Source: Botryllus schlosseri
Lineage: Eukaryota
DNA: 64,000 nucleotides
Direction of reading: 5' to 3'
Assembly: GCA_051294905.1 (NCBI GenBank)
Contig: CM119384.1
Location: 7,192,001-7,256,000, forward strand
Below are positions 1-25,527 of the stretch, piece after piece. A program made the position numbers and the translations under genes. Under the pieces are notes generated by a model. That model searched no databases. It was not told the origin of the DNA and saw only the letters and a list, made by a program, of their open reading frames with translations. Numbering within the stretch: position 1 is the stretch's first letter; every line of letters starts with the position of its first letter.

Positions 1-3000
1 TAATTACGGTGGCTTTTGTGTTTTTCAACCACGGAGAGTGTACCAGAGTGATGTGGACACCGCCATTGCGGGAAAGCTATGCAATGCCGTTTCTTATCCT
101 GGAGCTGTTTTTAGTCACTCATATGTTGAAGACCCACCGGCCAAGTCGTCAGTATGTATTAGTTTACTGGCATTTAAGGATGCAGTGTGTGTATAGTGAG
201 CACAAAGACACTTTATTTCTTTGCAGTAAGCAATATAATCGTCATATATCGCACTGAAATCATTTAGAAATATTGTTTCGTTTTTGCATGTAGACTTAGT
301 GCCTCATAATTCTTGCTAGATACGAGCCCAGGACGCTGAATGATTTTTATTCAAGTTGAATTTTTCCGTCTTATTATTCAGGATTGTTGCTTTCATGTTG
401 GTATAACATTTCAGGCATGGCATTTGGATCGGACTTGCTGCGTTTTCGTTCATGCTGCCATGGCAATTTGCTCAGTTTGCTCTACTCACGCAGACTGCCG
501 CTGTGTATGGGATCTACCTTCTAGAATTTATAGGCTCATATAAGGTATGTTTCATGAATGCATGTCATTTCGCTCCTACATTAAAGAATGAAATTTCAAT
601 CTGATTTAGGTAGTGTTACGATTTCGATAGGCCTATAATGCAGAAAATCAGCTACCTGCATGCATCACTGTATGCTCGTGTTTAGCATTGCATGGCCAGC
701 ACAATATGTTAAAACCTTTTAATGTTTTTTTGAAATCCTCTTTTCAAATATTCTCATACCTACCAACGTTCCCAATTGCATTGAATTTGGGAATTAATTA
801 TATTTATTGAAAAATTTATTGCATTTTATTGCTCAATTTAACAATCGTCATCTGGTATTCACTCTTGCGCTTTTGTTTACCTTAACCATCGAATCATTAT
901 TTGCAGATGAAGATACTTCTTCACGCACAAATTGGCGCGCTGGCGGCGAATTTCGTGTTTCAGTTCGGCAACGAGATGCTGCTCACCTCATTTTATGCTT
1001 CTAGCATTCTCGTAGTGTTGGCAGTTGTCATGTTGGAAAGCAGAATCGATAGAATCTTGAGAAACTTCTTTGTTCGGGTCTTCGTTAAGGTACAGTAATC
1101 TTTTGTAACATTGCACTGGACAATGATTGTCATGTATGTATTATAATTCCACTCCTATAGTATCCGAATACTACTATCTACTTTGAAAATTGTAATAAGT
1201 ATGGCGATTTTTTTCACCTAAAAATAGAAGATTTTGACCTAAAAAATCAGAATTTTGACATTTTTTAATCTAGAAAAAATTAATTTGACAAAATTTTGAC
1301 CTACCGTATGTAAATTAGGTGTTTTCCCACATTGTACTGGTTGTCTTTATTTCTGATAGGAACTTATGTCTTTACGAAGTAGTTTGTCCTGGAAGAACTT
1401 ATTGTTTGACTTGAAAACTGACAAATTTGTACATGAAAATACTTTTTATTAACGAAATCAGGACCTATGAAAAATTCCCGTAGTTACATCACGCATTATG
1501 GTGGAAATAATTAAAAAATTTTGTAGTACAGCGAAAGTTACTTTCCTACATTCTCGGGTAGAAAGTGTCTGTCCTTACTAAGTAGCTTGTCAAGAATGGA
1601 GTAAGAACGTTCAACAGCAGCAGAAGTTGGCTGGCAACACTGAAGTTGTGCGTACACTGCTGGTGACACACCGTGCTGCTCCATTCTGACAATGTTGCCT
1701 ACATCACAATTTTTCATCATGCACTTCTTGATATGAGAACCAATGCCCACGCAGTCTTGCTTCAGTTAGGATATTGCGGTAAGTTCAGCATAACACCATG
1801 TCAACCTATTTGTTTCATTTGGCCGTTTATGATTCACAATGAGCAGATAATGGGCCGTCTACAACGGTAGGCCTATAAAGTAGGCTAAAAGCTGTAAAAT
1901 GTCAAACGATAAAGTTCACCGACAGTGCAGATATTTCCGATACAGACAAAATGCAGGTGACAAAATTTTTTTTGACTTTGTGAACAATTTTGACAATTTT
2001 TTGACCTAATCGCACTAGTAATAAGTTAGTAGTAGATAGTAGAGGTACAGTCAGTGGTAGAGACCAAAGTAAAGTTTCATTCCATTCATGAAAATCTCAG
2101 AAATCAATTGGTCAAAAGACTCTATATTATCTAGGTTCTGATTTGGGGTTTCGGAACGCTTTTCTTGAAGAAAGCCATCGCCGCAGCTTTATTCATCGCC
2201 GATGACGCCCACATTTGGGACATTTTGAGGTCGAAATTTTCCGATTTCAACAACTTCCACACGATGCTGTACACATGTGCAAAGTATTGTGATCCTGTCA
2301 TGCTCACTTGAATTATTATATTCACTATCAAACGTTTATTTCCTTAGGGAATTTGATTTCATCGAAATGTCAACTATATTCGGCTTGGTTAAAACAATGC
2401 TCATTCCGACCAATGTTGTTGTGTGCTTTTTGGTGGCTTTCAAGTGCCTTCAATACGAATACAACATATACAAGGTATGTTCCGAGTTGAGTGTTGCTAT
2501 GCATGACTTTACTAGTCTTCATAAACGTATCGGTGAAAAGAATCGTTCAATAATTGCCATTTGTATTTTGGGTTTATAGTTTCATGGGGATTTTGAGGTC
2601 TTGATGTTGAACCGTAAAATAATGAAAGCTGGCAATATAAATACTCACATGTGGGCTGTAGAATAGATATGATGCTGTTGACATATTTTATAGTCGGATT
2701 CATTTTATAGTCGTTCTTTGCAATGTCAATCCAGCATGTTTCTAGATACACGTATTTTTAGTGTGACATAAAATGTCACTAGTGCTCCCAAATAGTACAG
2801 TTCAACCCATTTGTTATCGAAATATTCAATACATGTTAGGCTACAAAGGCGTGCGAGGGAAATACATCTAGTGATGAGGATAACAATTCCGATGCAAAAG
2901 TCATTACTGCAAAGTCGAAGAAAAGACAAAGTGTGGACACAGAAGAAGATAAAGCATTCAGGTAGCTACTCGTACCTTTGTATTTTAGACCTCCCTCAAC

Positions 3001-4573
3001 ACTCGAAATCTTATTTCAGGACAAAACCCCACGCTGAAATTGTGTACAACATCCTGCAAATGTTCGCGTTCACATTTATGGCAGTTATGATTATGAGATT
3101 GAAGTTATTCATGACCCCGATTATGTGCGTCGTGTCGGCGATCATTGCTAATAGGTATGTGTCTAGCGTCCGTTTTCAAGTTCTCATTCTTAAAAGTCAC
3201 ACCGAGATAACTTATACAGGCAAATTCTTAATGTCGCTCGATCCAAGTTTATCTCGTTTCTTATCGTTCTACTTGCAATGTCGTGCGTTCAGGGATGGCA
3301 GAATCTCTCTAAACAATGGAATATCATGGGTGAATTCGAGAACTACCCACACGAACAGGTAGGGCGCTGGTGTGAGTATTGTTTGCGAGGTTTTTGTTTC
3401 TGACATCTTGATGATATTTTTCCTGAAATGCTACGAAATGACATATTCGCACTTTATTGTTTTTGTAACATCAGGACTCAAAAATTGGTTTGATTTGTGA
3501 AATTCAATCTTCCTTTCCAAGCCTTTCTTTTGCGCTCCGCACACTACACCCAAATTAACCAGATTATGATCGTGAAATGTTGCCGTAAAATTATTTAACG
3601 TTGGTCTACCCAGTAACAATACCTTTACGGACCAGCTCTTCATTTTTTTGCAGCTTATCGATTATATCAACCAGAATTTGCCACAAGAAGCTGTCTTTGC
3701 AGGTGCCATGCCGACTATGGCCAGTATCAAATTGTCGTGCAACCGTGCCATTGTGAATCACCCGCATTATGAAGACGCTGGTATGTTGTACGCGTATATT
3801 GGCAAACTGTGTAAAAGCCTGGAGCTTGTATTGTATCTATTCTGATCTGTGTTTCGAAGCCAGTGCCTGTATAGTCAGTCAACTATGCACACGATATATC
3901 TGGAAGTGAACTGTGTCTTTATAAACCTAACTTTTATTTGTTAACAGGTCTCCGTGAACGAACGAAGAAAGTGTATTCAATGTACAGCCGCCGACCAGTG
4001 GATGTGGTGCATAGGACAATTCTCGAGATGGGCGTCACCCATTTCATTCTGGAAAACTCGTGGTGTGTGCGGAAAACCAGGGACGGATGTCAGATGCCTG
4101 AGATATGGGATTTAGAAGATGTAGAGTATCGGGTAAGTTTCTGGGACATTTTTGTTGGGGCATTTGGTGCCTGTGCGGTTGCTACACTTGGTCTGTTATA
4201 GGGAACTTGTCGATAAATAAGAATGTGCTCATCATGAAAGCCCAATGGTTTTCAAGTGTGAAAGACCATTAATCACCATGGCTAGAATAACTGAGTTTTG
4301 AACATATGGGACTCTCTGCATTCGAATGATGGTCAGTGAATGCATATTTGTGAATAGAACATTAGAATTGATCTGGAATGTCAAGATGAGTTTGTGGTAT
4401 CAAATTCAAACAAGACAAATGCCTGATGCACTGAACATTTTGAATTCCTTGATCTATTACAGGGACAAACTCCTGCCTGTGCGCATGTCAGAGAGAAGCC
4501 GGGGCCATATTTTTCGGAAGTCTACAAAAACCAGGTTTACACTGTGTTGAAACTGAATCCGCCACCCATCTAG
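1..4573 (+). CDS. DPY19L1: DPY19-like C-mannosyltransferase, multi-exon, 5' end outside the window
   Basis: Exons splice in phase (approx. 1-151, 415-544, 907-1089, 2136-2273, 2349-2474, 2840-2960, 3020-3154, 3220-3359, 3655-3780, 3949-4133, 4462-4573). They give DPY19 motifs HGECTRVMWTPPLRESY, FMLPWQFAQF, FGNEMLLTSFYASS, DDAHI..L.SKF, IMRLKLFMTP, FAGAMPTMASIKL, IVNHPHYEDAGLRERTK.VYSMYSR. Stop TAG at 4571-4573. Confidence 0.92.
1165..2045 (-). mobile_element. Degenerate hAT-type insertion in a DPY19 intron, carrying a transposase C-terminal fragment
   Basis: Minus ORF 1538-1750 contains CQPTSAAVERSYSILDKLLSKDRHF..EN, resembling the hAT C-terminal dimerisation region. TTTTGAC subterminal repeats lie near both ends, and there is a short CTACTATCTACT inverted repeat at about 1173 and 2030. 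Boundaries are approximate. Confidence 0.5.
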
Positions 4574-5996
4574 ATTAATGATTTTTGTTTGGTTGTGGCC
4601 GTTTCGACTATGTTTCGTTGCTTAAAGCGTTTGTGTTCTGTTTAGAGTTATAGTTTACGCTTTCATAATCAGCTTGCCATATGCATTCACGACAGAAAAA
4701 GTATACAATTATATAGACAACTTTGACTCATATCCAAAGAATCTGTGCCTGTTACAAAGTGTAGCATACTACCTATATTTTTTCCGGACTGTGCAAACTG
4801 TTTTTATCATACTTGTGCAGTGACCAGTTTCAGTTATGGGTTATTAACCAATATCAGCAATATTTGCACATTGTGAAGCACTTTTGGTAGCCCCTCTTTT
4901 TGCCGATTTGTTGTTTGTGTCTGAAATTATCAGTAGATAGAAAATATATAAGTGGAGTCGAAATGTGACTTCACAAAAGCAGCCAATCATAGCAATGGCC
5001 GTGTGCCTTTAGTCGAATTTGTGCGTTTTATATAACCATGACAATTTTATAACACAAGCAGTTTGAATTCGTGACTCTTTTTAACGTTGAAATCATAATA
5101 TAATTTGTGGTGTGGATAGTTTGGTGAAGCTCTTCTATATTCCATGTGCCTTTGTTGGATACTTTCGCTATTGATACATTTATTAAGCGGGATGGAGGCC
5201 CAGGGTGCCTTGGCATAATTTCCGGGTGTACAATGATTGGCACTACTTGAGCTTGTGTGTATGCCCCGAAGAGATTCGCCGCATCTTTTCTGATACAATT
5301 TTTAATGTTGCTGGTTTGTTTGTAAAATGTTGGTCTTATCAAGTAAAACCTTTGCATACACTTGAGTAATGTTGTTATTCGAGAGATTTTAGGATAGTGG
5401 TTCCCAGTTTGGAATTTTGTAGACTTTGAAATTCTTTACCTCAGATCAGGTAAAATATTTAGCAAAGGTTGAGATAAAAGGTGCAGAGGGTCACGTCAAC
5501 AAATAAGCATGAAGTACTCCGATGTAGTACTGATTCACATTTGATAATAACAGAAGTCAGTCGTCAACACTGCTGCTACTGTAGTGGCCTTCCCTCCTTC
5601 TCCATGCTCAGTGTTATGGATGTATATTGCGCTGCGCCGTGCAGTTCTTATGTTTGCCGTCTGCAATACTTGCAGCTTTTTGGTCTGCCTCAGGGGTTAT
5701 TTATGTTTTCTGCCTATACAGCACTAAAAAACCTTCACACATGCTGGAACCCACTTACACAGAATGAAAATGATAGACACGACGGGTGACTTCACTTGGG
5801 ATTTGACATTTCGAGTTGGATAATTGCTGGTGTAGCGGTTAATTCATGACCACCAGCTGCACAATTCCATGAATGCACGCTAAGCAGGGACTCTTAAATC
5901 TGAACAAATTAGATTTTCCTACAATCTGTCACTCGAGACAAACCCTCATTTCTAAATATTTCAAACATGTATTCAATTCTCATATATCTATGAACT

Positions 5997-13778: not shown

Positions 13779-16700
13779 TCACTTTCGCCGTCCATGCGCA
13801 TTTTTACTACTCGGAGTGTTGCCTTTCTTGGGAGTAGATTCATCATCCGTTTTCTTATTCGCTTGACCGAGTTCCACTTTTCTCACTCTTTGAGCGAAAG
13901 ACAGCGAGCATATCGTCTCGCTAACATTTTTCTCCACCGGCGCAACCTGGACTACCATCAAGGTTTTGCTGTCCTTACTCAACGAGTCTTGTAGAAGATA
14001 AGTGAGCTTGGAATTACGGAATGGAACGTGAGATTGCTTAGCGCCAAGTGCTTGAATGACATCTCCCAAAGCCGACAGGCTTTTATTGATGTTCTGTGCC
14101 TCTTTCAGTCGGTCGCCAGAAGCTCCTGATTTGGAAACTCTCTCCGAGCCCGCCAGATCGATAAGATTGAGTTTACCGAACGATTTCGAACCTGTTGTTG
14201 TGTTAATTCCATTCACGTATATCATCAAAACTGCGTGCGACCTCGAGCTGTGTTCGTTCATGTTGGTAGTTGCGGTAGCCCGGTTCTTACGACCCAGCTT
14301 AAATAAATTGTTCACATCTTCCAGATTATGAACCGTTTTCTGCGTCAACCCAGGAACATATAGACTGCCGTCGGCATTCATTTTGATGTCCAGTTTTTCA
14401 TAAGCACTTGAAGACGTAAGCAAATCCTTCAATGTCTCATTGTAAATTTCTATCAAAGACACCGTAATTTCGTAAGTCCAATCGCCCGTCTTTTCTTGCA
14501 TGTCTTTAAAAAGATCGGACAACGCTCTTTGATTGATCCCGGGGTTATCAGCCGTGCCTTCCATTGTGTATGTTTTACCCGATCCGGTTTGGCCATACGC
14601 AAAAATGCATACGTGATATCCATCGATACACGACGTAACTAACGCTTTTACTTCCGAAAAGACTTGGTTTTGCGTGGAGTCGGGTTGAAATACTTTGTCC
14701 AGTTCGAAAAGAGTGCTACGTCCACGTTGTGAATTATGCACGTACATCACCCCGTCGTCGTCACGATCGTATGTGATCGTGTTCTTGGCTTGTGCTCCAG
14801 AGCCGTCTTCTGAAATTGCAGGACGCACGCGAGCAAACACCCTAATGTTTCCTTTTAGCTCCACGAGTTCGTTATGGTATTTTTTACGTAACATCATTTC
14901 TTTCTTGTATCGTCTAATCAGCTCCTTGCTATTCTCGTTAATATCCGATATCGAATCCAGAATTTTTTTCTCCGCTTGTCTTAGAGATTCTTCAATGAGA
15001 ATGGGGAATTGGGCACATTCCTTCTTCAAGTGCTGGTTCTCATTTGAGATTGAACGCAGTGAAGACAACAGATGACGGAGGGAGTAATGCATCTTATGGA
15101 GCTTTGAGCTGTACACACGGATTTCAGAATTGACAGACACGCGCACCTGCTCCATTTCGGTGGAATGGCGTCCGTTCAACTGCACAACTTCGCTCGCATG
15201 AGACGCTGTCAAAGCCGCTATTTGATTTTCCAAAGATTCCAAATGAGCCGACATTTCATTTTGCTTATCGTTAGCATTACCCAGATCTGTCTGGTAAGCT
15301 AGGTTTTGCGATTCAACGGTGCTTATGTTCATTTTTAGAGTCGCGTTTTCCCTTTGGAGTGCCGATAACTCGACTGTTGCGACATCGGACGCGCCGCTGA
15401 GGTCTTGTATTTGAGATTGTAACGCTCTGGTCGCGTTATCCGCCATGAGAAGTTTATGACTCAAGTCATCTTGTTTGCGCTTTTCTCGTGTAACTTGAGA
15501 TTCCAATTCGAGATTTCGAGATTTCAGAAGGGCAATTGAATTCTCTTTACTATCCATCTCAACATGCAATGACTCTATTTTTTTGGCGTTCGAGTCCATT
15601 TTCTCCGATAGATTCCGATTGAAATCTCTCGCTTTCAGCAAATTGTCCTCCGTCCTGTGAACTTTCTTTTCAAGTCTCTCGATAACAGATTCAAATTCTT
15701 GTTTCTGTATTTCGAAAGATTTCTCGGCGTGGCGCAGCTCCTCTTTCAATCCGGTCTCTGTTTGCTTCATTTTGTTTGTTAAAACATTGAAGTCGATCAT
15801 CGCTTCGTCTCTGGCGCGTTTTGAGGATGCCTTCAACTCCTGCAACTCTTGTTCAAGTTCCGACACTTTGCTCTTTTCAGTTTTCAAGCTCTTCTTTCCT
15901 TTCTCCACATTTTTCTTCTCTTTATTCAGCTCCGTCTCTTTGTGTCGCAGTTCGCAACGGAGGTTTGCTTCTTCCTCAAGGTGAGACGAATTTTTCTCGT
16001 CCAATTCCGCCCTCACAGTCTGGATTTCTTGTTCCGCGGAACCCAAATTATTCTTCAGTCTAGATATTTCATCATTTCTGCACCGTAACAATCTTTCCTT
16101 GTCATTTATGACCTTCTCCAAATTTACTATCTTATCTTTAGCAGAGCCAATTTCAGATTGCTGTTGAGTTGATTCTACTTCTATCACAGACTCGACAGTT
16201 TTCGTAACAACAACGGGAGGTCTATTTTCCAATTCGATTAAATCAGACGACTTCTTGTCCAAGTCCGACTTCAGACGCTCCATTTCAAGACGCATTTTTT
16301 TTTCATTGGATTTCCGCTCCTTCTCCATTCCTTTGATTTTCATTTCCAGTCGATCTAATTCATCCGAGAGCAAATCCTTATTTTCTCTCTCAGCGACAAG
16401 CTCTTTATTTCTATCTTCAAGTACGATTTTTACCTCTGATAACTCCTCTTTCAATCGTTTGACAAACCCATCGTCCAACGATGAAATTGTGGTTTTGGGA
16501 ACGTCGGGTTTCTGAATCGGGTTTTCATGAAGTTTTTGTAATTCCGACGATTTTTGCTCCAGGTTCTGTTCGAGATTGATGATTTTTTCGTTCAAACCAA
16601 ATTTTTCGTTTTGAAACGATTTAAGATTGTCAATTAGTTTTTGAACGCTGGATGTTTGAGGTATTTTTTCGATCGTCGGTTTGATTGGATTCCCTTTCAA

Positions 16701-17192
16701 AGTGTCTTCAAGCTCTCTGATTTTCATTTCATTTTCAAAAATGATGTCTTCCAAATTTACAATCAAATTATCCTTATCTTTCATGACATCTCTTTGTGCT
16801 TTTTTGAGTATTTTGATGTGCCGTTGGTATTTCAATTCTTCTCTTTGAAGGCGAGAACTTAGGATTCGCATGTCATCAGACAATTCCTTATTCCGCACTA
16901 ATAAATTATCCCTGTCCTTTTGCAACGAGGCATGTTCGGCTTTGGTTGGACCATCAATCATCTTCATTAAAGTATCGTCATCGTCACTGAAAGTAACACT
17001 GCTATCAGAGTCAGTCTCAGATTTAAAATCATCCACTTGATCCAGCCCAAGCTCTTCCATCAATAGTTGACTTTTCGATGGTGATGGTTTTGGACGGTCT
17101 AGTATGAGTTGAGGCTTTTTGTTGGCTTGCGATGTATCAACAAGTCTTTTAGGATAATTGAATTTGGGCTGAGATCTGGACAGTGCATCCAT
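13779..17192 (-). CDS. KIFC3: Kinesin-14 (KIFC3-like) C-terminal motor protein, intronless, 1137 aa
   Basis: Long coiled coil followed by ELKGNIRVFARVRP, P-loop YGQTGSGKT, switch I NEHSSRSH and switch II LIDLAGSER in one uninterrupted ORF. Confidence 0.92.
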   Translation of the reverse strand: MDALSRSQPKFNYPKRLVDTSQANKKPQLILDRPKPSPSKSQLLMEELGLDQVDDFKSETDSDSSVTFSDDDDTLMKMIDGPTKAEHASLQKDRDNLLVRNKELSDDMRILSSRLQREELKYQRHIKILKKAQRDVMKDKDNLIVNLEDIIFENEMKIRELEDTLKGNPIKPTIEKIPQTSSVQKLIDNLKSFQNEKFGLNEKIINLEQNLEQKSSELQKLHENPIQKPDVPKTTISSLDDGFVKRLKEELSEVKIVLEDRNKELVAERENKDLLSDELDRLEMKIKGMEKERKSNEKKMRLEMERLKSDLDKKSSDLIELENRPPVVVTKTVESVIEVESTQQQSEIGSAKDKIVNLEKVINDKERLLRCRNDEISRLKNNLGSAEQEIQTVRAELDEKNSSHLEEEANLRCELRHKETELNKEKKNVEKGKKSLKTEKSKVSELEQELQELKASSKRARDEAMIDFNVLTNKMKQTETGLKEELRHAEKSFEIQKQEFESVIERLEKKVHRTEDNLLKARDFNRNLSEKMDSNAKKIESLHVEMDSKENSIALLKSRNLELESQVTREKRKQDDLSHKLLMADNATRALQSQIQDLSGASDVATVELSALQRENATLKMNISTVESQNLAYQTDLGNANDKQNEMSAHLESLENQIAALTASHASEVVQLNGRHSTEMEQVRVSVNSEIRVYSSKLHKMHYSLRHLLSSLRSISNENQHLKKECAQFPILIEESLRQAEKKILDSISDINENSKELIRRYKKEMMLRKKYHNELVELKGNIRVFARVRPAISEDGSGAQAKNTITYDRDDDGVMYVHNSQRGRSTLFELDKVFQPDSTQNQVFSEVKALVTSCIDGYHVCIFAYGQTGSGKTYTMEGTADNPGINQRALSDLFKDMQEKTGDWTYEITVSLIEIYNETLKDLLTSSSAYEKLDIKMNADGSLYVPGLTQKTVHNLEDVNNLFKLGRKNRATATTNMNEHSSRSHAVLMIYVNGINTTTGSKSFGKLNLIDLAGSERVSKSGASGDRLKEAQNINKSLSALGDVIQALGAKQSHVPFRNSKLTYLLQDSLSKDSKTLMVVQVAPVEKNVSETICSLSFAQRVRKVELGQANKKTDDESTPKKGNTPSSKNAHGRRK

Positions 17193-17738
17193 TTTATATT
17201 ATTGAGGCTGGACTGGCAGGTCACTGTCACACAAACTTGGGGTATACCGTATCGTATACTACTGGTGCCTGGTGGTAGAGATCAGCGGTCTACTCTTCTT
17301 GCCAAATTACAAAGCGATCTTCTTGAGCGAGAGCGAAAACCAACAGAATAGAATCGGCAACCGTAGACTGCTTCAGAATCACGATCCTAGTTGCATCTAA
17401 CCGGCTATACACCTCCGTCACATAGATTGAACGCCGAAAGAAGTACGATGTTTATGTCTTTATTTACACCAGGAATCATCACTACCATCATTCTGGCAGA
17501 AAATGTTTCAATGATGTAATAAAAGTCAGTATGCACAAATGCACTTGCACATGCACTATGCATCCGATACAGGCACTACAAAAGAAATCAATTTATATTA
17601 TAGATTTATTACTGTTATGATCCCTTATATTGTATAACATTAGCGATTACTGGTAATAATGTACAATTGTATTTCTAGAGCTTCTTGGAGGTACAGAACT
17701 TCAATATACAATTAAATAGTATATTCATATTGAAATGA

Positions 17739-17772
17739 ACCCGAATATTTTCGGCTGACACTCGTCAGGGGT
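17739..17772 (-). ncRNA. Minimal type I hammerhead ribozyme (PLE-associated)
   Basis: Minus strand reads ACCC-CTGACGA-G-TGTCAGC-C-GAAA-ATAT-TC-GGGT: intact core, 4-bp stem I, palindromic AATATT stem III. Confidence 0.7.
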
Positions 17773-18804
17773 AATGATTTTTACAACAACACAACTGCTC
17801 CCTTCAACACGCAAAGACGTGCTTCCTGCACTTCAACAAAGTAATGTAGTGTACGAATATAGGTGCCACTGTAGAGATTGTAGGATGGAGTGACGACTGA
17901 TTTAAATGCCTAATTAGTATTCATCCGCGACATATTTTGTTTGCGTGATTTTTCAGCAATTATCTCGTAAAAATGGATATTTATGGTATTATTGCCCATA
18001 ATACTACAAATATGAGATATTATACCGGTATTAGTGCATTGATATACCGAAATATCTATATAAGTTGAACTACTCTATTTACACTACGCGCAATAATATT
18101 TTCAACTCCCTTTAGATTGGTCACGCTCCGCTTTGCGGAGGGAGCTACCCATTGTTACGTGTACCATTAATAATCCCACATGGAATTCAGACGGTGGAAA
18201 GTTGAGTGTTCGGTTGGTTTTATGCATGGTTGTCTATGGGAATGAGTCGGAGTATTGGAGGTTGAATACTTATAACGGACTCTGTGACTAATTGGACGTC
18301 TTAATATGTTTGGCCTGATTAGTGAATATCTTGGATACGTGCGTGAAGGTCTTGCGTTTGTTGCCGTACGAAGCGATGAATATACCGGTATATAATCGCT
18401 GCACAATGCGCACGGTCGGTGAATACCAGCGATGATTTATGATATAATAGCTATTATAGTGGCGTATTATGATTATAGAAGATAACAATAATAGGGCAGG
18501 CGATGAAAATGAAACGGCATTTCGTTGCAGGCGAAGTGGGTATGCCATATCATGGTCCTTCTGGAAGGCGTCATTCAGCAGAATCTGTATGTATTTTAAC
18601 TTGCCGACGAGAAAATATAAGTCACTTACCGTACTATTGGAGGACATTGCTGTGATACTATAGAATTAGCGAGCTATCTTCATTTACTGTTCCGGTATGG
18701 TAGCCTAATTGTTATTTGATTAGCAAAACGGAAATAAAATTCTGAGTATTATGCTTTCACAGAAATTTTGATTCCTTTATAACCGATACTTTTTCGTAAA
18801 AGTT

Positions 18805-20593
18805 ATGGCCGAAGAATCATTGTGGGAGGATTGGGAATCCATCACTGAGGAGGAAATTTCCCAATGCTTTGAAGGATTGGATGAGTGGAGTGGAATAAGT
18901 TGTGACGTCTGTGAAGCCATATTTCCCACCGTAAGGGAACTCAAGAAGCACGGGAAAGTGCATAAGCTCCCGTCACCAACTGAGGAAATTGACATCGACC
19001 GAATAATGGACATTTTGAAAATTGCTTGCCGTAATTGTCATTCTATTTCCAGGTGTGGACCACGATTTGAGGAATTGGATTTGAATCTTATTGTTCCACT
19101 TGTCAAACGCTTGAATGCTGTGTTCTGTGACGTTGGTACTGATGGTATTTATCAATACTACTCCAACATTTGCCAACAGGCAAGCAAACTTCTTGGACTG
19201 CAGCATCAGCTCCTTGCTGTATCTTTGCTTGTGAAGATTGTTGATGCACTGGTTCAAGCTGAGGAAAAAGTTTCCACTGCAAGAATGTCTGGTATCAATA
19301 GCAGGGAATCGGGTATGGTATATTGTGCAATTCTGTTGAATTTTATAGCATACCAATCAATATTCTAGTTCCGTGTGCCGGCCTAGTATTTATTCAATTC
19401 ATTATAGTTGGATGACTTTACAGACATTCTTGAGTACATTGGAGGGGTACTGCTTCATTCACTCTCTACGAAATCACACAAGGCTGTTGCTGCTTGCTTG
19501 TCGGAGGATGCACCAACCGGACAACTGATTCAAATAATGGAAAGAAAGCATCACTGCCTGAAGTACCCATCAGATAAGTTCATTTCTAGTTATGTGGTTT
19601 ATGATTAGAGAAACTGTAAATTCCAGACCAATTGGCATGGGAAATTTGGATTGAATTACATGAATTCATTTACAGTAGGCCTATACAACCAATTTATGTG
19701 AATTTCGTTTGTTAAGCTTGTTTGGCTTGTGACGTCATAATTGGAAATACCAAAAATTCACAGTAATCAGAAATTGTCAAATTTCCACCAGATAACGTGG
19801 AAATTAATTGTTCATTTTTTGTAGCAAGGTAGAATGCACATTGAAAACCATGAATTCATGAAAATGACCTTAAATTTTTTTTCCCCTTTTCAGATATACC
19901 ACATTCCATTTAAGCTGTAGGAAAATGAGAAGCTGCTACTCACAAGCCTCACTAACATGATATAGACTTCAAATGGTTCATTCGGCTCACTTTATATGTT
20001 AGTCAGGCTCTTGAGGAGATTTCCACCAAATTTTAGGGTTATCAAACTATCATAGCAAGATATATTGCTGTTTCACTGCAGATTTGATGAAAATCACTGA
20101 AGCGTGACATGCAAAAAGCATGATTTTGTGAGGAGTGTAACTCGGTCATCAGATTGAATTTGAGAAAAAAAATTTGGATTTCCTCATAATAATAACAGAA
20201 GAATCAATGTGCCAAATTTCATAGCCATCCATTAACCTTGGTGCTCATCTGAAAATAAATTTGCTCATTTGGCAGGAAATTACCCAGGGAGTAATTATGC
20301 GATTTTACTGTTTCCATAGCAGAGAAAGGTTTAAACCTGCCTCGCAAGTTGATTTTCTACAACTAGTTGATGAAATTCACCAGGATCCATGGTATAGAAG
20401 TCTTATTGAAAATGTTGTCATGCAAACAGGTGAATGTGACAGTTATGTGGAAGATGTTCTTGATATGACAATGAAGCATTTGAACAGGATTCTGACGCAT
20501 GGTTTAGTGAAATTTAAATTGAACAGTAAGCTAAAAAATAACTCTAAGTTTTCCAAGGCGTTACGAGATGAGTTGAAGTCCTTGCGTAGTTAG
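18805..20593 (+). CDS. Transposon accessory protein: C2H2 zinc finger plus a region resembling the P-transposase C-terminal domain, about 320 aa
   Basis: Exon about 18805-19312 (CDVC...HGKVH), exon about 19423-19588 (DILEYIGGVLLHSL...LIQIMER...LKYPSDKF), a possible 22-nt micro-exon near 20082, and a last exon to 20593 (ERFK...SKALRDELKSLRS). It lies wholly between the TIRs. Confidence 0.72.
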
Positions 20594-20776
20594 GGAGTTC
20601 TTCTGTAGTTTTCTTTTCCCATTGTAACTGATGCTGCCTATGTACAATGGGTTTCTTTCTACCAAAAAAAGTAAACCAATGCTAAGGCCAAAACCTTGAC
20701 GTGGTGCATTGGCTTGTTGTTTACACTAATATTGGCCGGCAGCCATATATCATGACGGTCCATTATTTGAACAAAT

Positions 20777-23700
20777 TTATTTAGCCTTTCGCTTGCGTCT
20801 GGGTAGTTGATCTTCACAAACAGTAGTCCATGGATTTACTGATCCATGAGCGTAGGTTGTGTTGGCACCCTTAACCATTTTGATGATTTTCCTTTGGCAT
20901 ACAGCTGTGATCGAGTATCCAGCCTGTGCCACATCTGGATTCCTGGAGTATCTCCCTGTCAGCCTCTGAAAAATTTCAATCAAGTTTTTGAATCTTGAAG
21001 CCTATTTAAAATCACTTTTCCTTACCAAGGATCCGAAAGTTGCTTCGAGTACATCTTGTGTCAAGACTTTTAATGCTACCGATTTATGTCCAGCATTAAG
21101 TAACCGAATTACTAGGCGAACCATATTTCTGGTTGTAAACATGAGGCCAATCAGTGTTGGCGTGGCCATTAATCGTTTGTGCTCACCAGGATGTTTTGTG
21201 TGCACCTCATTCTGTGGGGAGATTGTATTACCGGTATAGTTCTTGCTCTGAAGATTTAAAAAAATACCCACCTGCCAATCCTCCAAGTATTTGATGAACA
21301 CATTTTTCAGCCAAAGTAATCTTTCATCAGTTACAGATGAGATGGAGTGAGATGTTACAATGTTAAACCATCGATCGAACAGCAAGACGAACTCTGACGT
21401 CCCAGCGGAATTTGAAATATCGTACACAAGTGACTTCCCAACTTCGTAACTGAGCACATCTTTCGCCAGTGAAACTCTCATCTAAAATTTACAAAGTGGA
21501 ATCGTACAGCAATAATTTTGAAGTTAAGAAGGTAACGAACTTTGCTGTATGAGTCGAGGTCAATATGTGATTTTGTCAACTTATTAGGAAGGTGCAGTGG
21601 TTGTGCCTGATCTTTGTTGAACAATTCGCGCACATGTGTCCAGAGAATATCTTTTCCATCCTTGCAAAAATATTTCGTCCCTCCTGGTTTTGACGAATAC
21701 AATCCATTCCTTGCTGTCTGATGGGAATCAATAGGACCATATCTGTATTTTGTTTATGATATTACAAACTTACTTTCAATAAGTGACTTGTGTCGGAGCA
21801 TAAAAATATTGGCTCGTCGGGTAAACTGGGATGTGGGATGGTGTAATTATTGTAGTTTGAGTTACCAATTGCTCCATGCGCCATAGAAAAAAACTTTCGG
21901 TTTGTTGATGCTCCATCAGCCACCACAGCATGGATTCTGACACTGCGGAATTCGCATGCCATGAATGCCTCCCAGAACATTGAAGTCAATTGTGCCGCTG
22001 GAGTGGCCTTTGTCGGGTACCAAGATACAGGCATTGATATTGTTCGGTCGAACGATCTTACGTAAAACACTGAAATGAATATCAAAGCTTGAATTGTAAG
22101 GGTCAATCTTGTAGCTAAAGTAAAATGAGCCTACTGTATATATGTGTTGCAATATCCTCGGGAGAATGTCGATCACCATGATCTACATATCCCAATATCC
22201 TGCCATCCTGATATACTAGGTTTTCTCTCACTAAATGAAGCATTTGTTTAGCCTGTCAGTTTGTATAAATGTAACATACGCTTAACGTACCTTTCATTTC
22301 GTCAACCACCAAATATGCATTGATAGTTTTTGTCAATTTTTCTAATTGCAGGAGTGTGGACTCACAAACTCCAGCATTAGAAGATGCAAAATTCCTGAAC
22401 ATATCAAGCAATGCTGAAAAGTTCCAATATTACAAGCATGGTGAAGATTCTGTATAGGTGTACCTATATTGCCTCAGAACACCAGAAGAAGGAAGCGATA
22501 AAACTCCGGTTTGTCGGAGCATTTGGTATCCCGCAGGTGATCTTGCGTACAATTCTAGTGCCCACCTAATCACGTCTGGATGATATCGTCTAGCGTTAGG
22601 ATGCCTCTCTGCATTTGAGCACTGCTCTTGAAAAAACATTCTTTGCCACTCGTTCATGTTATCCGATTCCTCATTCATCATTGCCTGCGAGTCATAAATG
22701 AATTGAACTATGAACTTCATTAATCACGAGATGACTCTCGCAACCATAATTTCCATGTGGAGGTCTTCCTGCACTGTGAGCCTCTCATCTTTTTCTAAGA
22801 GTTCCAACTTTTTTTTGCTACAGTACTTCCTGTTATATCTCGCTTTTATGTCGTGTTTGGCACAGTTTGTGCATACTGAATCGGGATCCCAAACTAAATA
22901 CATACCGCATCACTTGAAAATAGATTCAAACAATTGAACTGCAATGGTTACCTGTTATAATGCAATTTTTAGCTCGTGAAAATGTTTTTTCCACTTTCAA
23001 CTGGTCCGACTCCCATTTCATAATTATATGCTCCTTTGTATGCTTTGTCACTTCCTGAACTCCGGTGCAAAGTCTTACTTCATCAAGCTTTTCTATAAAT
23101 AACTCGTATTATGCGAGTTTTCTAATATATTGGTAATTTATAGGTAACCTAAGACGTTATGAAGGGTTGAATGTTTCAGATCGATATGAAGAAGCTGGTC
23201 CGTACAGAATTTCCAGCCGTGAAGAGCTGCTGATTCAATGGATAGAGTGCTGGAAATCACTACCCTGTTCAAAATGAATATAATTTCATGCGTGCCACAA
23301 TCAATATAATGAAATTAACATTAACTTAACCTGATTATTGGCACTATGTCATCTTCCATACCATGCTTCTCAATGTGCAGTCTACCTTTCAGTTCATAGA
23401 ATGCCCAGTTACCTTAAATGAAGAAGCAATATATAGCTATTTAATCTACCCGTGATATCAAACCATCAGGCCTGCTATACCCCAAATTTTGCTGTTCAAA
23501 TTAGAAGCTGATTGTACCAAATCTGGAATATTTTTGTGCCTCACTGTCTCTGGCAACTCTTTTCTTGGAAAAGGTATCTTCCTTTCTTTCTATATGAATA
23601 AATATATCAATTGGAATCGTTTGGTGCATTGGTTTCTTGATTTGAGTGAGAGATACCCTGCATACCTTTATAATTGTGCTACATCTTTCAGGCAGATTTA

Positions 23701-24056
23701 GCTTAGGCAGAGCTCTCACTTTGAGTTGCTTTCTGGTTTTGAGCTGAATGATGTCGCTCTCCTCAAAATGATTTTCGCAGATTGCGGCTCTATTATAAAT
23801 TACACTGTTAATTCTGTTGAAGTTGAGACAGCTGCTTTACTTACGTCTCCTTATGGAGCAACGTCTTGATACGATCTCCTTTTGAGGGGTCCCTGATGGA
23901 AAGAAGGAGGCTGGCCATTGCTGCGTGCTGCTTCTGGGCCGCTTCATTCCTTAACAGCTCTGGTCTTCGTACCGTGAATAAGGACCTCTTACGAGATTGA
24001 TCACTACGCGGAATGTTCACATATGTACACCCAGGGATAGCGCAGTTTTTGGCCAT
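20777..24056 (-). CDS. THAP-domain P-element (THAP9-like) transposase, 15 exons, roughly 800 aa, apparently intact
   Basis: All exons join in phase with GT-AG introns of about 55-70 nt. THAP (MAKNCAIPGC...ICENHF...LPKLNLP), RYHPDVIRWALELYARSPAGYQMLR...LPS, catalytic VVDEMK, VVADGASTN, DTSHLLKTARN, KMRVSLA, TQDVLEATFG, C-terminal PRRKRKAK. Confidence 0.92.
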
Positions 24057-25218
24057 AATTGCCGCGGCGGATCTATTATTTTTAACTGCTAAAGACGCGA
24101 AATGTACAACGGGATATAAGACAATGCGATGTAGCCTAGTGAACAGAAAAGAAGATGTCAAAACGAACAAGTACAGTCTTCCAATGTAACATAGGCCTAA
24201 TGCCCGATGAAACAGTGTACGATATTGATCTTTTGGATGTAGTGATAATCTTTTCATCGCTCTTTTTCATCCGCTTTCCGTGTAGGCTATTCGTTTTTTT
24301 CATCGGTTGCTTATGCACAGAAAATAGTTTGGGCAGTTTTGTATCGGTATCAGCGGCTTTCAACGGCCACTCAGTTACCGCATAAAGCCTTATCAATTAT
24401 AGCATTGTCTACGAGTTTACGGGATTCGGACATGGTCGGCCGCGGAGAGTTTATCGCTGAATAAGGCATTGCGGGAAATTGATTTTAAACATGTTCTGGG
24501 TGGAGGCCAGTTGTGAAATTTTTATAGTGAGAACATATTGATGCTTCCTCGTAACATGCCAAATTTGAAACGTCTAGCTAGAATATTTCCACCCTTTTTC
24601 GGCGGTCAAATTCGTCCATGTATTTCCGAAATCGCCTATACTTTTACATGTAAAATAGGACAATCGGACTCTCGCGAATGGAATTTTACTCCGCAAAGTC
24701 AAGCGTGACGAATCTAAACTTAGAACAATGGGTCGTCGCTCCATCCTATAATCTCTATAGTGCCACTGTGATTGTGGCTACGTGGGAAGAACGTCACGAC
24801 GTCTGCAGGACCGCATAAACCAACATGTCCCCAGATTTATCAGAACACGTGCGTCACGCGATGTGAAAAGCTCACCCTTAACTCATCCACTCAAGATTGA
24901 TGCTGACCGATCAAAGGCCATTAATTCTGCCATCGGCAAACATCTGTTGGATAATCCGATTTGTGCGAATAATTATCGAGACGACCGATTTCGAATCGTA
25001 GGTCGAGGCCGTTCACAATTCCATTTGTGTGCCTTGGAATCAACTTTTATCAAAATACACCAACCAAAACTCTGTCAACAAAAGGAGTTCGTGTATCACC
25101 TAAAAATAGTACATTGAACGCTCTCTCATTCGAAATTTCATGCTGGTGACGTCATATTTTGTGATACGATTGTTGATATACAATGTTCTTTCCAATTCTC
25201 TACTAGTTGCTGACGATT

Positions 25219-25252
25219 ACCCCTGACGAGTGTCAGCCGAAAATATTCGGGT
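25219..25252 (+). ncRNA. Minimal type I hammerhead ribozyme in the PLE 3' end
   Basis: ACCC CTGACGA G TGTCAGC C GAAA ATAT TC GGGT; predicted cleavage after C25248. Confidence 0.72.
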
Positions 25253-25527
25253 TCATTTCAATATGAATATACTATTTAATTGTATTTCTCAACCAAATAT
25301 GAGCATTGTAAATAGTAGACTAGTTACTTTGATTCCACCAACTTAATCTTAACACAGAAAACTGCTGGGCTCTTTGACGCCGGTTTTGTATTTTTATCAC
25401 TGCTTGCCTAGGCTATGGTTTCACGGGAATACCTTCATAATGTCAGTGACGTAACTATAATTATTCACGATGGTTCGAAGTCGCTAGAGCAATTATGTAA
25501 ATAGCACGAGCAGAAAGTCTAGCGTAG

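What the first reader, a model, noticed from the sequence alone, without database searches (positions are those of the whole stretch)
17870..24759. Two-gene P-superfamily transposon with an apparently split transposase
Seen in the sequence: TIRs and a 7-bp TSD enclose two convergent genes whose stops are about 180 bp apart. The THAP-DDE transposase ends only about 68 aa after its catalytic Glu; about 220 aa follow E531 in the 751-aa Drosophila P transposase. It lacks the C-terminal YIAGYV...L.(F/Y)PS domain of P/THAP9 proteins. The partner gene (18805-20593) encodes a C2H2 finger plus EYIGGVLL...LIQIMER...LKYPS...helical tail, which resembles that missing domain. Inference: a two-subunit transposase, or a dedicated regulator supplying the C-terminal domain in trans. 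I do not know of a description of this architecture.
Basis: partly seen in the sequence, partly recalled or inferred. Interest (0 to 1): 0.85.

Follow-up and report, generated by a model that had tools for sequence, protein, structure and literature searches.

The report
Split two-gene P-type jumping gene
This is a recently active P-type DNA transposon whose cutting enzyme has lost its tail domain, while a neighbouring gene inside the same element encodes that domain as a separate protein; no such split layout was found described for this family.

Summary
Window 17871-24759 is one copy of a multi-copy P-superfamily transposon with 28-bp terminal inverted repeats and a 7-bp target duplication, seen in three copies. 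Its THAP/HTH/RNase H/GTP-binding transposase (minus strand, 24056-20777) stops about 70 residues after the catalytic Glu. It has no C-terminal domain (CTD).

The convergent plus-strand gene (18805-20593) encodes a protein of about 330 aa. Its last 160 aa are homologous to the P/THAP9 CTD:
- Profile-profile comparison gives 95.8% probability, E 7.7e-9, over 137 columns.
- 11 of 21 relatives hit Pfam Tnp_P_element_C.
- The solved Drosophila CTD (6p5a_B) is the best PDB match, Z 7.7.
- ESM Atlas matches reach TM 0.65-0.70, and all of the top five are THAP9_C or P-transposase clusters.

One correction: the 703 bp at 19583-20285 is not an intron. It is a nested repeat private to this copy, and it breaks the partner gene.

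The pairing recurs. Two distant relatives from other samples end the transposase at the same place. About 70 loci of many families in this genome pair the two genes, mostly convergent and some in tandem. A canonical fused-CTD family in the same genome has no partner gene nearby. Both genes show pN/pS of 0.16-0.24.

Best reading, at about 0.6: a split transposase whose CTD is supplied in trans. Binding and activity are untested. I found no published description.

The parts
17864..17870 (.). Left copy of the 7-bp target-site duplication (GTGCCAC)
   Evidence: Two sister copies carry different 7-bp duplications.
17871..17898 (+). Left terminal inverted repeat, 28 bp
   Evidence: The same terminus occurs in sister copies.
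18111..18140 (.). Left arm of a 30-nt subterminal inverted repeat (partner arm 24689-24718, 87% complementary). Possibly a transposase-binding region; this is inferred.
   Evidence: pair I3.
18805..19317 (+). Partner gene exon 1, 171 codons: acidic N-terminus, a lineage-specific C2H2 finger (residues 32-53) and a helical module. The donor is probably ATG|GTATAT. An alternative donor at 19312/19313 paired with an acceptor at 19423/19424 would also keep the frame.
   Evidence: It aligns with the N-halves of relatives of about 300 aa. It shows no homology to canonical P transposase (hhalign probability 0.1%).
19408..19582 (+). Partner gene exon 2, first part: start of the CTD-like domain (EYIGG...LKYPS)
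   Evidence: profile match at 19417-19587.
19583..20285 (.). Nested 703-bp repeat private to this copy. It interrupts partner exon 2. No target duplication was seen. The boundary is ambiguous by 1 nt.
   Evidence: Sister copies join query position 1712 directly to 2416. Solo copies of this repeat occur elsewhere at 96-100% identity.
20286..20593 (+). Partner gene exon 2, second part: rest of the CTD-like domain, with the stop at 20591-20593. It is in frame with 19408-19582 once the insertion is removed.
   Evidence: profile match at 20285-20584.
20777..20983 (-). Transposase last exon: end of the RNase H fold (RNPDV...RKIIK) plus a conserved tail (KG-N...NPWTTVC...P+R+), then the stop at 20777-20779. 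No CTD follows.
   Evidence: It maps weakly to canonical residues 515-549 of 772. Two distant relatives end at the same place (A3).
21002..21481 (-). Transposase exon block: second half of the GTP-binding insertion domain and the RNase H helix carrying the catalytic Glu (QDVLEATFG)
   Evidence: Pfam TNP-like_GBD, E 0.006. About 51% identical to the L036 relative.
21538..21729 (-). Transposase exon block: first half of the GTP-binding insertion domain
   Evidence: Pfam TNP-like_GBD, E 4.9e-4. 55% identical to L036.
21765..22411 (-). Transposase exon blocks of the RNase H N-terminal part: first Asp (LVVDEMK, about 22290) and second Asp (AVVADGAS), separated by short introns
   Evidence: Pfam TNP-like_RNaseH_N, 27.2 bits, above the 24.6 cut-off..
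22445..22903 (-). Transposase exon blocks: putative coiled-coil region (KKKLELLEKDERL; inferred by position, not tested) and the P-type helix-turn-helix domain
   Evidence: Pfam Tnp_P_element, E 0.0018. 41-52% identical to L036.
23504..24056 (-). Transposase THAP domain in two exon blocks, with the start codon at 24056-24054 (MAKNCAIPGC ... AICENHF ... ALPKLNLP)
   Evidence: Pfam THAP E 9e-4 on the sister copy. The same two-exon THAP occurs in L059.
24689..24718 (.). Right arm of the subterminal inverted repeat
   Evidence: pair I3.
24732..24759 (-). Right terminal inverted repeat, 28 bp
24760..24766 (.). Right copy of the 7-bp target-site duplication (GTGCCAC)

Best explanation
This is a P-superfamily cut-and-paste transposon in which the transposase is naturally split into two genes. 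The minus-strand gene makes the catalytic subunit: THAP DNA-binding domain, HTH, and an RNase H fold with a GTP-binding insertion. It ends right after the RNase H fold with a short conserved tail. The plus-strand gene makes a protein of about 330 aa with a disordered acidic N-terminus, a helical module of about 80 aa (plus, in this lineage, one C2H2 finger), a linker, and a 150-aa all-helical domain homologous to the P/THAP9 C-terminal domain.

Inferred mechanism. The second protein joins the transposase oligomer on the transposon ends and places its CTD-like domain where the covalently attached CTD sits in the Drosophila strand-transfer complex. There the CTD lies between the RNase H domain of one subunit and the GTP-binding domain of another, contacting transposon and target DNA. 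Transposition would then need both gene products. The partner's N-terminal module and the transposase's conserved tail are candidate docking surfaces. That is speculation.

The window copy has its partner gene broken by a nested repeat, so it would depend on partner protein made by sister copies.
For: Shown:
- The transposase lacks a CTD. It stops about 70 aa after the catalytic Glu, against about 264 aa in the canonical family of the same genome and 220 aa in Drosophila.
- The stop position and tail are conserved in relatives that share only about 50% transposase identity.
- The partner's C-half is a CTD homologue. hhalign against about 110 canonical CTDs gives 95.8%, E 7.7e-9, 137 columns. 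Against whole transposases it maps only to residues 608-757 of 772. Eleven of 21 relatives hit PF12596, and P0018 is above the cut-off.
- The AF2 model has pLDDT 88.8. Its best PDB match is the Drosophila CTD chain, Z 7.7. THAP9 residues 710-853 is rank 1 in Swiss-Prot AFDB. The top five Atlas rows are all THAP9_C or P transposase.
- Linkage: about 51 convergent and about 19 same-strand partner/transposase pairs in this genome, across families with 39-100% identity.
- The canonical fused-CTD family has no listed partner match within 5 kb.
- Both genes are under purifying selection between two sub-lineages: partner pN/pS 0.16 (p 2.6e-6), transposase 0.24 (p 3.6e-5).
- Recent mobility: TSDs, copies at 94-100% identity, and amplified deletion derivatives.

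From the literature (PMC7776569): the Drosophila CTD is all-helical, is tethered by a flexible disordered linker, packs against another subunit and contacts DNA. [quoted passage not shown]
Against: - No evidence of physical interaction. The complex prediction gave no verdict.
- No expression or splice evidence. About 27 reads per 1.9 Gb were laid, with no joints.
- The window's own partner sequence does not itself reach any Pfam threshold, and phmmer did not find long P transposases. Homology rests on profiles and fold.
- For helical domains a Z of 7.7 alone is middling, as the tool's own caveat says.
- Gene order varies among families, and I could not inspect the tandem loci. The many copies of the abundant family with 166-aa open frames, apart from one locus (C15), have no listed transposase exon nearby.
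- The pairs were matched by eye from coordinate lists that are lower bounds.
Confidence: 0.6

Rival explanations
1. The partner is a dedicated regulator rather than an obligatory subunit. A free CTD-like protein could titrate, inhibit or time the activity of a transposase that can work without a CTD. Alternatively, the CTD-less transposase could itself be a repressor-like protein, as the Drosophila 66-kDa product is.
For: In Drosophila the presence or absence of the C-terminal third switches the protein between transposase and repressor (PMC7776569). The partner evolves faster than the transposase: about 27% against about 50% identity between the window family and L036. The deletion derivatives that amplified keep only partner exon 1 and the THAP exons.
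Against: A pure inhibitor is unlikely to be retained under purifying selection inside dozens of diverged, recently mobile families. The complementary distribution, with the CTD either fused or in a neighbouring gene, fits a required function better.
Confidence: 0.2
2. The partner has another element-specific role unrelated to catalysis, such as nuclear import, target choice or host-factor recruitment. Its CTD-like fold would then be an exapted remnant.
For: Its N-terminal half, including the lineage-specific C2H2 finger, has no counterpart in canonical P transposases. The canonical CTD's C-x2-C motif is absent.
Against: The homologous region spans the whole CTD, 137 aligned columns including the conserved EYxGGY and LxYPS motifs. 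The transposases paired with it have all lost exactly that domain.
Confidence: 0.12
3. The arrangement is a chance or degenerate one: a truncated, dead transposase next to an unrelated captured or nested gene.
For: The window copy is indeed damaged by the nested insertion in the partner gene. RNA support is lacking.
Against: The same truncation point and the same neighbour occur in distant relatives from other samples and at about 70 loci here. Both genes have pN/pS well below 1. TSDs, near-identical copies and non-autonomous derivatives show recent mobility.
Confidence: 0.05

Closest known systems
Drosophila P element transposase and animal THAP9-type P transposases (single polypeptide)
   Same: Same domain order (THAP, HTH, RNase H with GTP-binding insertion), the DDE motifs, TIRs of about 30 bp, a 7-8 bp target duplication, and internal-deletion derivatives. 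The partner's C-half is homologous to their CTD.
   Different: Here the CTD is not part of the transposase polypeptide. It is encoded by a second gene, usually on the opposite strand, fused to an unrelated N-terminal module. The catalytic subunit carries a conserved short tail that canonical proteins lack. The catalytic core is only about 20-35% identical to canonical ones over short stretches.
Drosophila P 66-kDa repressor (IVS3 retention) and KP proteins
   Same: Like the 66-kDa repressor, the catalytic subunit is a P protein that keeps the N-terminal DNA-binding part but lacks the C-terminal part (the repressor lacks the C-terminal third). The 2.7-kb deletion derivatives keep the THAP exons, as KP does.
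   Different: In Drosophila the CTD is added by splicing of one gene. Here it is a separate gene product. No repressor role has been shown here.
Two-gene eukaryotic DNA transposons: PIF/Harbinger (transposase plus Myb-like protein) and ProtoRAG (convergent RAG1-like and RAG2-like genes). Recalled from my own knowledge, apart from the PIF/Pong abstract seen.
   Same: Two proteins are encoded within one pair of TIRs, and both are presumed necessary. ProtoRAG also has a tail-to-tail gene layout.
   Different: The superfamilies are unrelated. In those systems the second protein is not a detached domain of the ancestral transposase.
Heteromeric bacterial transposases such as Tn7 TnsA/TnsB (from my own knowledge)
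   Same: The functions needed at the transposon ends are divided between two polypeptides.
   Different: The folds are different and both Tn7 subunits are catalytic. No evolutionary relationship.

Membership tests
P superfamily of DNA transposons (catalytic subunit) | RNase H-like DDE domain of the TNP type, with the three acidic residues | tested here: met
   PF21787 at 27.2 bits, above the 24.6 cut-off. The motifs LVVDEMK, AVVADGAS and QDVLEATFG are read.
P superfamily of DNA transposons (catalytic subunit) | GTP-binding insertion domain between the second Asp and the Glu | tested here: met
   PF21788 matches on two consecutive exon blocks, covering profile positions 17-56 and 58-113. E values are 4.9e-4 and 6e-3, each below the curated cut-off because the domain is split by an intron.
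P superfamily of DNA transposons (catalytic subunit) | N-terminal THAP zinc finger and P-type HTH | tested here: met
   THAP E 9e-4 (20.4 bits, cut-off 23.9) on the second THAP exon. The C-x4-C ... C-x2-H pattern is readable. HTH PF12017 E 0.0018. Both are weak individually and colinear together.
P superfamily of DNA transposons (element) | Terminal inverted repeats of about 30 bp and a 7-8 bp target-site duplication | tested here: met
   28-bp TIRs. 7-bp TSDs in three independent copies.
P superfamily of DNA transposons (canonical architecture) | C-terminal domain (THAP9_C / Tnp_P_element_C) on the same polypeptide as the RNase H domain | tested here: not met
   The transposase stops about 24 residues past the RNase H C-terminal region. 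The partner-family (CTD-like) profile matches the plus strand only. The canonical family in the same genome has THAP9_C at residues 604-746.
P/THAP9 C-terminal domain (PF12596, PF22824), tested on the partner's C-half | Sequence-profile match to the domain | tested here: inconclusive
   The window family's own sequence has no Pfam hit. Eleven of 21 relatives hit PF12596 (best E 1.6e-5; P0018 at 26.5 bits, above 22.6) and one hits PF22824. Family profile against the canonical CTD profile: 95.8%, E 7.7e-9.
P/THAP9 C-terminal domain (PF12596, PF22824), tested on the partner's C-half | All-helical fold superimposable on the solved CTD | tested here: met
   6p5a_B: Z 7.7, rmsd 3.2 A, 110 of 118 residues, rank 1. 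ESM Atlas THAP9_C clusters: TM 0.65-0.70, rmsd 2.6-3.2 A. THAP9 residues 710-853 is rank 1.
PIF/Harbinger-type two-gene transposons | PIF-type DDE transposase plus a Myb/SANT-like second protein | tested here: not met
   Only P-type domains were found in the transposase. The partner has no Myb/SANT hit.

The most novel reading that the evidence does not exclude
A whole clade of animal P-type transposons uses a two-subunit transposase. The DNA-contacting C-terminal domain has been detached from the catalytic chain and is delivered by a separately transcribed protein with its own docking module, so mobility needs co-expression of two genes. This would be a genetic counterpart of the splicing switch that controls the Drosophila P element. 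Fold hits to free-standing CTD-like proteins of 180-540 aa hint that the layout may extend beyond this genome and the few unidentified samples searched here. Those hits include entries annotated 'Cnidarian restricted protein' and 'C2H2-type domain-containing protein'. Their organisms are not given, and some may be fragments of ordinary transposase gene models.
Probability: 0.55. Interest if true: 0.8.

Novelty: new variant of a known kind. Interest (0 to 1): 0.7.

Why it matters
P elements are a textbook model for cut-and-paste transposition, and their CTD is the least understood domain. A natural version in which that domain is a separate protein would be useful in four ways.
- It gives a ready-made system for asking what the CTD does, because it can be added or withheld.
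- It shows that eukaryotic DDE transposases can evolve into heteromers by domain fission.
- It offers a second route, two promoters instead of alternative splicing, to the same regulatory logic: there is no transposition without the C-terminal part.
- For annotation, free-standing 'THAP9_C-like' genes and 'truncated' P transposases should be recognised as halves of one system rather than as debris.

A two-component, GTP-dependent transposase could also be of interest as a controllable genetic tool.

Tried and rejected
- Pfam and PDB sequence searches with the window family's own CTD-like exon found nothing.
- PF12596 found nothing in the whole genome. This turned out to be a sensitivity limit, not absence.
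- phmmer against 1.84 billion representatives found only partner-like proteins of about 90-310 aa and no long transposases.
- The word-index search with partner exon 1 found a single close relative.
- RNA-seq laying gave about 27 reads per run and no splice joints, so the gene models rest on sequence, frame and conservation only.
- Complex prediction with P0011 and the transposase last exon of L036 gave no verdict, because the chains did not fold (pLDDT about 30). It is not evidence either way.
- The protein-atlas search by features gave no usable hit.
- I tried to find the TIRs of the distant relative L036/L059. The right end lies beyond the DNA that could be fetched.
- hhalign of the partner's N-half against canonical transposases found no homology.
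I did not try to get round it.
- Six literature searches found no description of a split or two-gene P element. Repbase reports are not in that library, so prior description there cannot be excluded.
It is a nested insertion.
Full report
**What is at the coordinates**

Window 17871-24759 is bounded by 28-nt inverted termini (17871-17898 and 24732-24759, three mismatches in this copy). It is flanked by the direct repeat GTGCCAC.

A search of the window's own 495-Mb assembly with the 6.9-kb stretch found six roughly full-length copies and many shorter ones at 92-100% identity. Two sister copies that I cut out have the same termini and their own 7-bp duplications, CTGAAAC and GCCACAC. A third copy lacks a matching pair. 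It is therefore a real and recently mobile element with a 7-bp target duplication.

At least nine copies are 2.7-kb internal-deletion derivatives that join element position 1465 to 5641 (window 19335 to 23511). They keep partner exon 1 and the THAP exons only.

All sister copies join element position 1712 directly to 2416. Window 19583-20285 is therefore a 703-bp nested repeat private to this copy. It occurs as solo copies elsewhere at 96-100% identity and shows no target duplication.

In the window copy the partner gene reads into a stop at 19606 and is broken. The transposase exon blocks of the window copy are open wherever the sister copies are open.

**The catalytic gene (minus strand, 24056 to 20777)**

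In order, its exon blocks carry:
- a two-exon THAP finger;
- a P-type HTH (PF12017, E 0.0018);
- the RNase H N-terminal part (PF21787, 27.2 bits, above cut-off);
- the GTP-binding insertion domain, in two pieces covering PF21788 profile positions 17-56 and 58-113;
- the helix with QDVLEATFG.

The last exon carries the end of the RNase H fold and 24 further residues, then a stop. That is about 70 residues after the Glu.

A canonical, intron-less P family in the same genome (L037 type, 16 or more copies with open frames of 790-813 aa) has THAP9_C at residues 604-746 of its 772-aa ORF, about 264 residues after its Glu. In Drosophila the Glu is E531 of 751. The partner-family profile, which models the CTD-like half, matches the window on the plus strand only.

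**The partner gene (plus strand, 18805-20593)**

Exon 1 has 171 codons: an acidic N-terminus, one C2H2 pattern and helices. Exon 2 has 160 codons.

An exhaustive phmmer search with exon 2 found 21 proteins. Most are 280-312 aa long and match with their C-terminal halves. None is a long transposase. Their N-halves also align with exon 1, except for the C2H2 finger, which is peculiar to this lineage.

An AF2 model of a full-length relative shows a disordered first 57 residues, a confident four-helix module (57-136), a linker, and the C-terminal helical domain.

**Is the C-half the missing CTD?**

Three independent kinds of evidence say yes.

(i) Pfam. Eleven of the 21 family members hit Tnp_P_element_C (best E 1.6e-5; P0018 at 26.5 bits against a cut-off of 22.6), and one hits THAP9_C. 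The window family's own sequence hits nothing.

(ii) Profile-profile comparison. I cut the CTDs out of about 110 canonical THAP9-like transposases and compared that alignment with the partner alignment. The result was probability 95.8%, E 7.7e-9, 137 aligned columns. Against the whole-length canonical alignment, the partner maps only to residues 608-757 of 772 (90%, E 1.6e-6).

(iii) Fold. The model of exon 2 (pLDDT 88.8, all helical) gave these matches:
- First PDB hit: chain B of 6P5A, which is residues 620-734 of the Drosophila P transposase. Foldseek rank 1 at E 0.37. VIA-align Z 7.7, rmsd 3.2 A, 110 of 118 residues, with the next hit at Z 5.1.
- First Swiss-Prot hit: human THAP9 residues 710-853.
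- ESM Atlas: the first five rows are all THAP9_C or P-transposase clusters, TM 0.65-0.70 and rmsd 2.6-3.2 A.

The partner's N-half has no detectable counterpart in canonical transposases (probability 0.1%).

**Does the pairing recur?**

In a 1.36-Mb contig from another sample (L036/L059), a 308-aa partner is only about 27% identical in the CTD-like part. It is followed by a convergent transposase that is about 50% identical exon by exon. That transposase's last exon ends at the same place with the same tail.

A third, shorter contig (L057) shows the same layout. Gene layouts of two more contigs without DNA are compatible.

In the window's genome the partner profile finds at least 151 matches. 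I matched their coordinates by eye with the matches of the transposase's last exon and Glu exon. The result was:
- about 51 convergent pairs, with gaps of about 0.1-2.6 kb, in families whose last exons are 39-100% identical to the window's;
- about 18 pairs on the same strand with the partner upstream;
- one pair with the partner downstream.

Some of the same-strand pairs are clearly deletion derivatives. At C9:6577884-6582317 there is room for a whole transposase gene between the two. I could not read these loci.

None of the canonical fused-CTD copies has a listed partner match within 5 kb. The domain is thus either fused or next door, which is the pattern expected of interacting parts.

**Selection**

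I compared two sub-lineages of the window's family (L031 and L033).
- Partner: 10 non-synonymous and 17 synonymous differences, pN/pS 0.16, binomial p 2.6e-6.
- Four transposase blocks: 16 non-synonymous and 19 synonymous differences, pN/pS 0.24, p 3.6e-5.

**How it most likely works**

The review of P transposition (PMC7776569) makes these points:
- The CTD is entirely helical.
- It is joined to the RNase H domain by a flexible, disordered linker.
- It contacts transposon and target DNA.
- Only the full 87-kDa protein transposes, while the 66-kDa product lacking the C-terminal third is a repressor.

A domain that is tethered loosely and packs against another subunit is the kind that can be supplied as a separate chain.

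I therefore infer that the partner supplies the CTD in trans, and that both genes are needed for mobility. I also suggest that the partner's N-module and the transposase's conserved tail replace the covalent tether. That part is speculative.

None of this is shown. The one complex prediction allowed gave no verdict, and RNA coverage was too thin to confirm expression.

**Comparison and novelty**

The element meets the defining features of the P superfamily except one: the CTD is not on the transposase chain. It works like other two-protein transposons but is not a member of their families. Six full-text searches found no description of a split or two-gene P element. Repbase was not searchable.

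I rate it a new variant of a known kind. The architecture and homology are well supported at about 0.9. The trans-CTD mechanism is at about 0.6.

Noticed in passing
window 17706-17775 and 25216-25285 (with 24767-25117): A perfect 70-nt inverted repeat brackets the P element about 100-450 bp outside its ends. The P insertion interrupts an ORF that reads across the target site as ...VYEYRCH|CDCGYVGRTSRRLQDRINQH... By eye this resembles a GIY-YIG nuclease motif, but Pfam gave no hit for the 111-aa right-hand part. The P element seems to sit inside another small repeat of about 0.7 kb with long TIRs.
   Followed up: partly
window 19583-20285: A 703-bp repeat is nested in the partner gene. Several solo copies elsewhere in the genome are 96-100% identical. 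It has no target duplication, no obvious TIRs and no poly-A. It is unclassified.
   Followed up: partly
G000 copies such as C9:22333340-22336026, C8:4399925-4402604, C2:582748-585422 (loci L013-L018, L026-L030): Internal-deletion derivatives of 2.7 kb outnumber the full-length copies. They keep only partner exon 1 and the transposase THAP exons. This recalls KP-type P derivatives and could mean truncated products of both genes are made.
   Followed up: no
G000 C9:6577884-6582317, C1:9205060-9206424, C10:340866-341913, C15:23812142-23815193: In some related families the partner-like ORF and the transposase 3' exons lie on the same strand: the partner is upstream in about 18 loci and downstream in one. 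Gene order in this clade is therefore not fixed. I could not read the DNA.
   Followed up: partly
L037-L052 (for example G000:C6:29539614-29542718): The same genome holds a canonical, intron-less THAP9-like P family. It has 16 or more copies with open frames of 790-813 aa and all five Pfam domains, including THAP9_C. Fused and split P elements therefore coexist in one genome.
   Followed up: partly
Fold search afdb_clusters: Free-standing predicted proteins of 180-540 aa with a CTD-like C-terminal fold appear among the top AlphaFold DB clusters. Examples are A0A8B6CVS7, 'C2H2-type domain-containing protein' (residues 241-407 of 411), and A0A7M5X5K7, 'Cnidarian restricted protein'. Some may be partners of split P elements in other genomes, and others may be fragments of gene models.
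   Followed up: no
window 13779-17192 (minus strand): An uninterrupted 1137-codon ORF lies immediately upstream of the element's host repeat. It has a long coiled coil and a C-terminal kinesin motor (PF00225, E 6e-114).
   Followed up: partly
L059:11591-11635 and 14381-14425: In the distant relative, a 45-nt inverted-repeat pair 2.7 kb apart runs from the spacer between the two genes into the transposase 3' region. This suggests a nested insertion there too.
   Followed up: no
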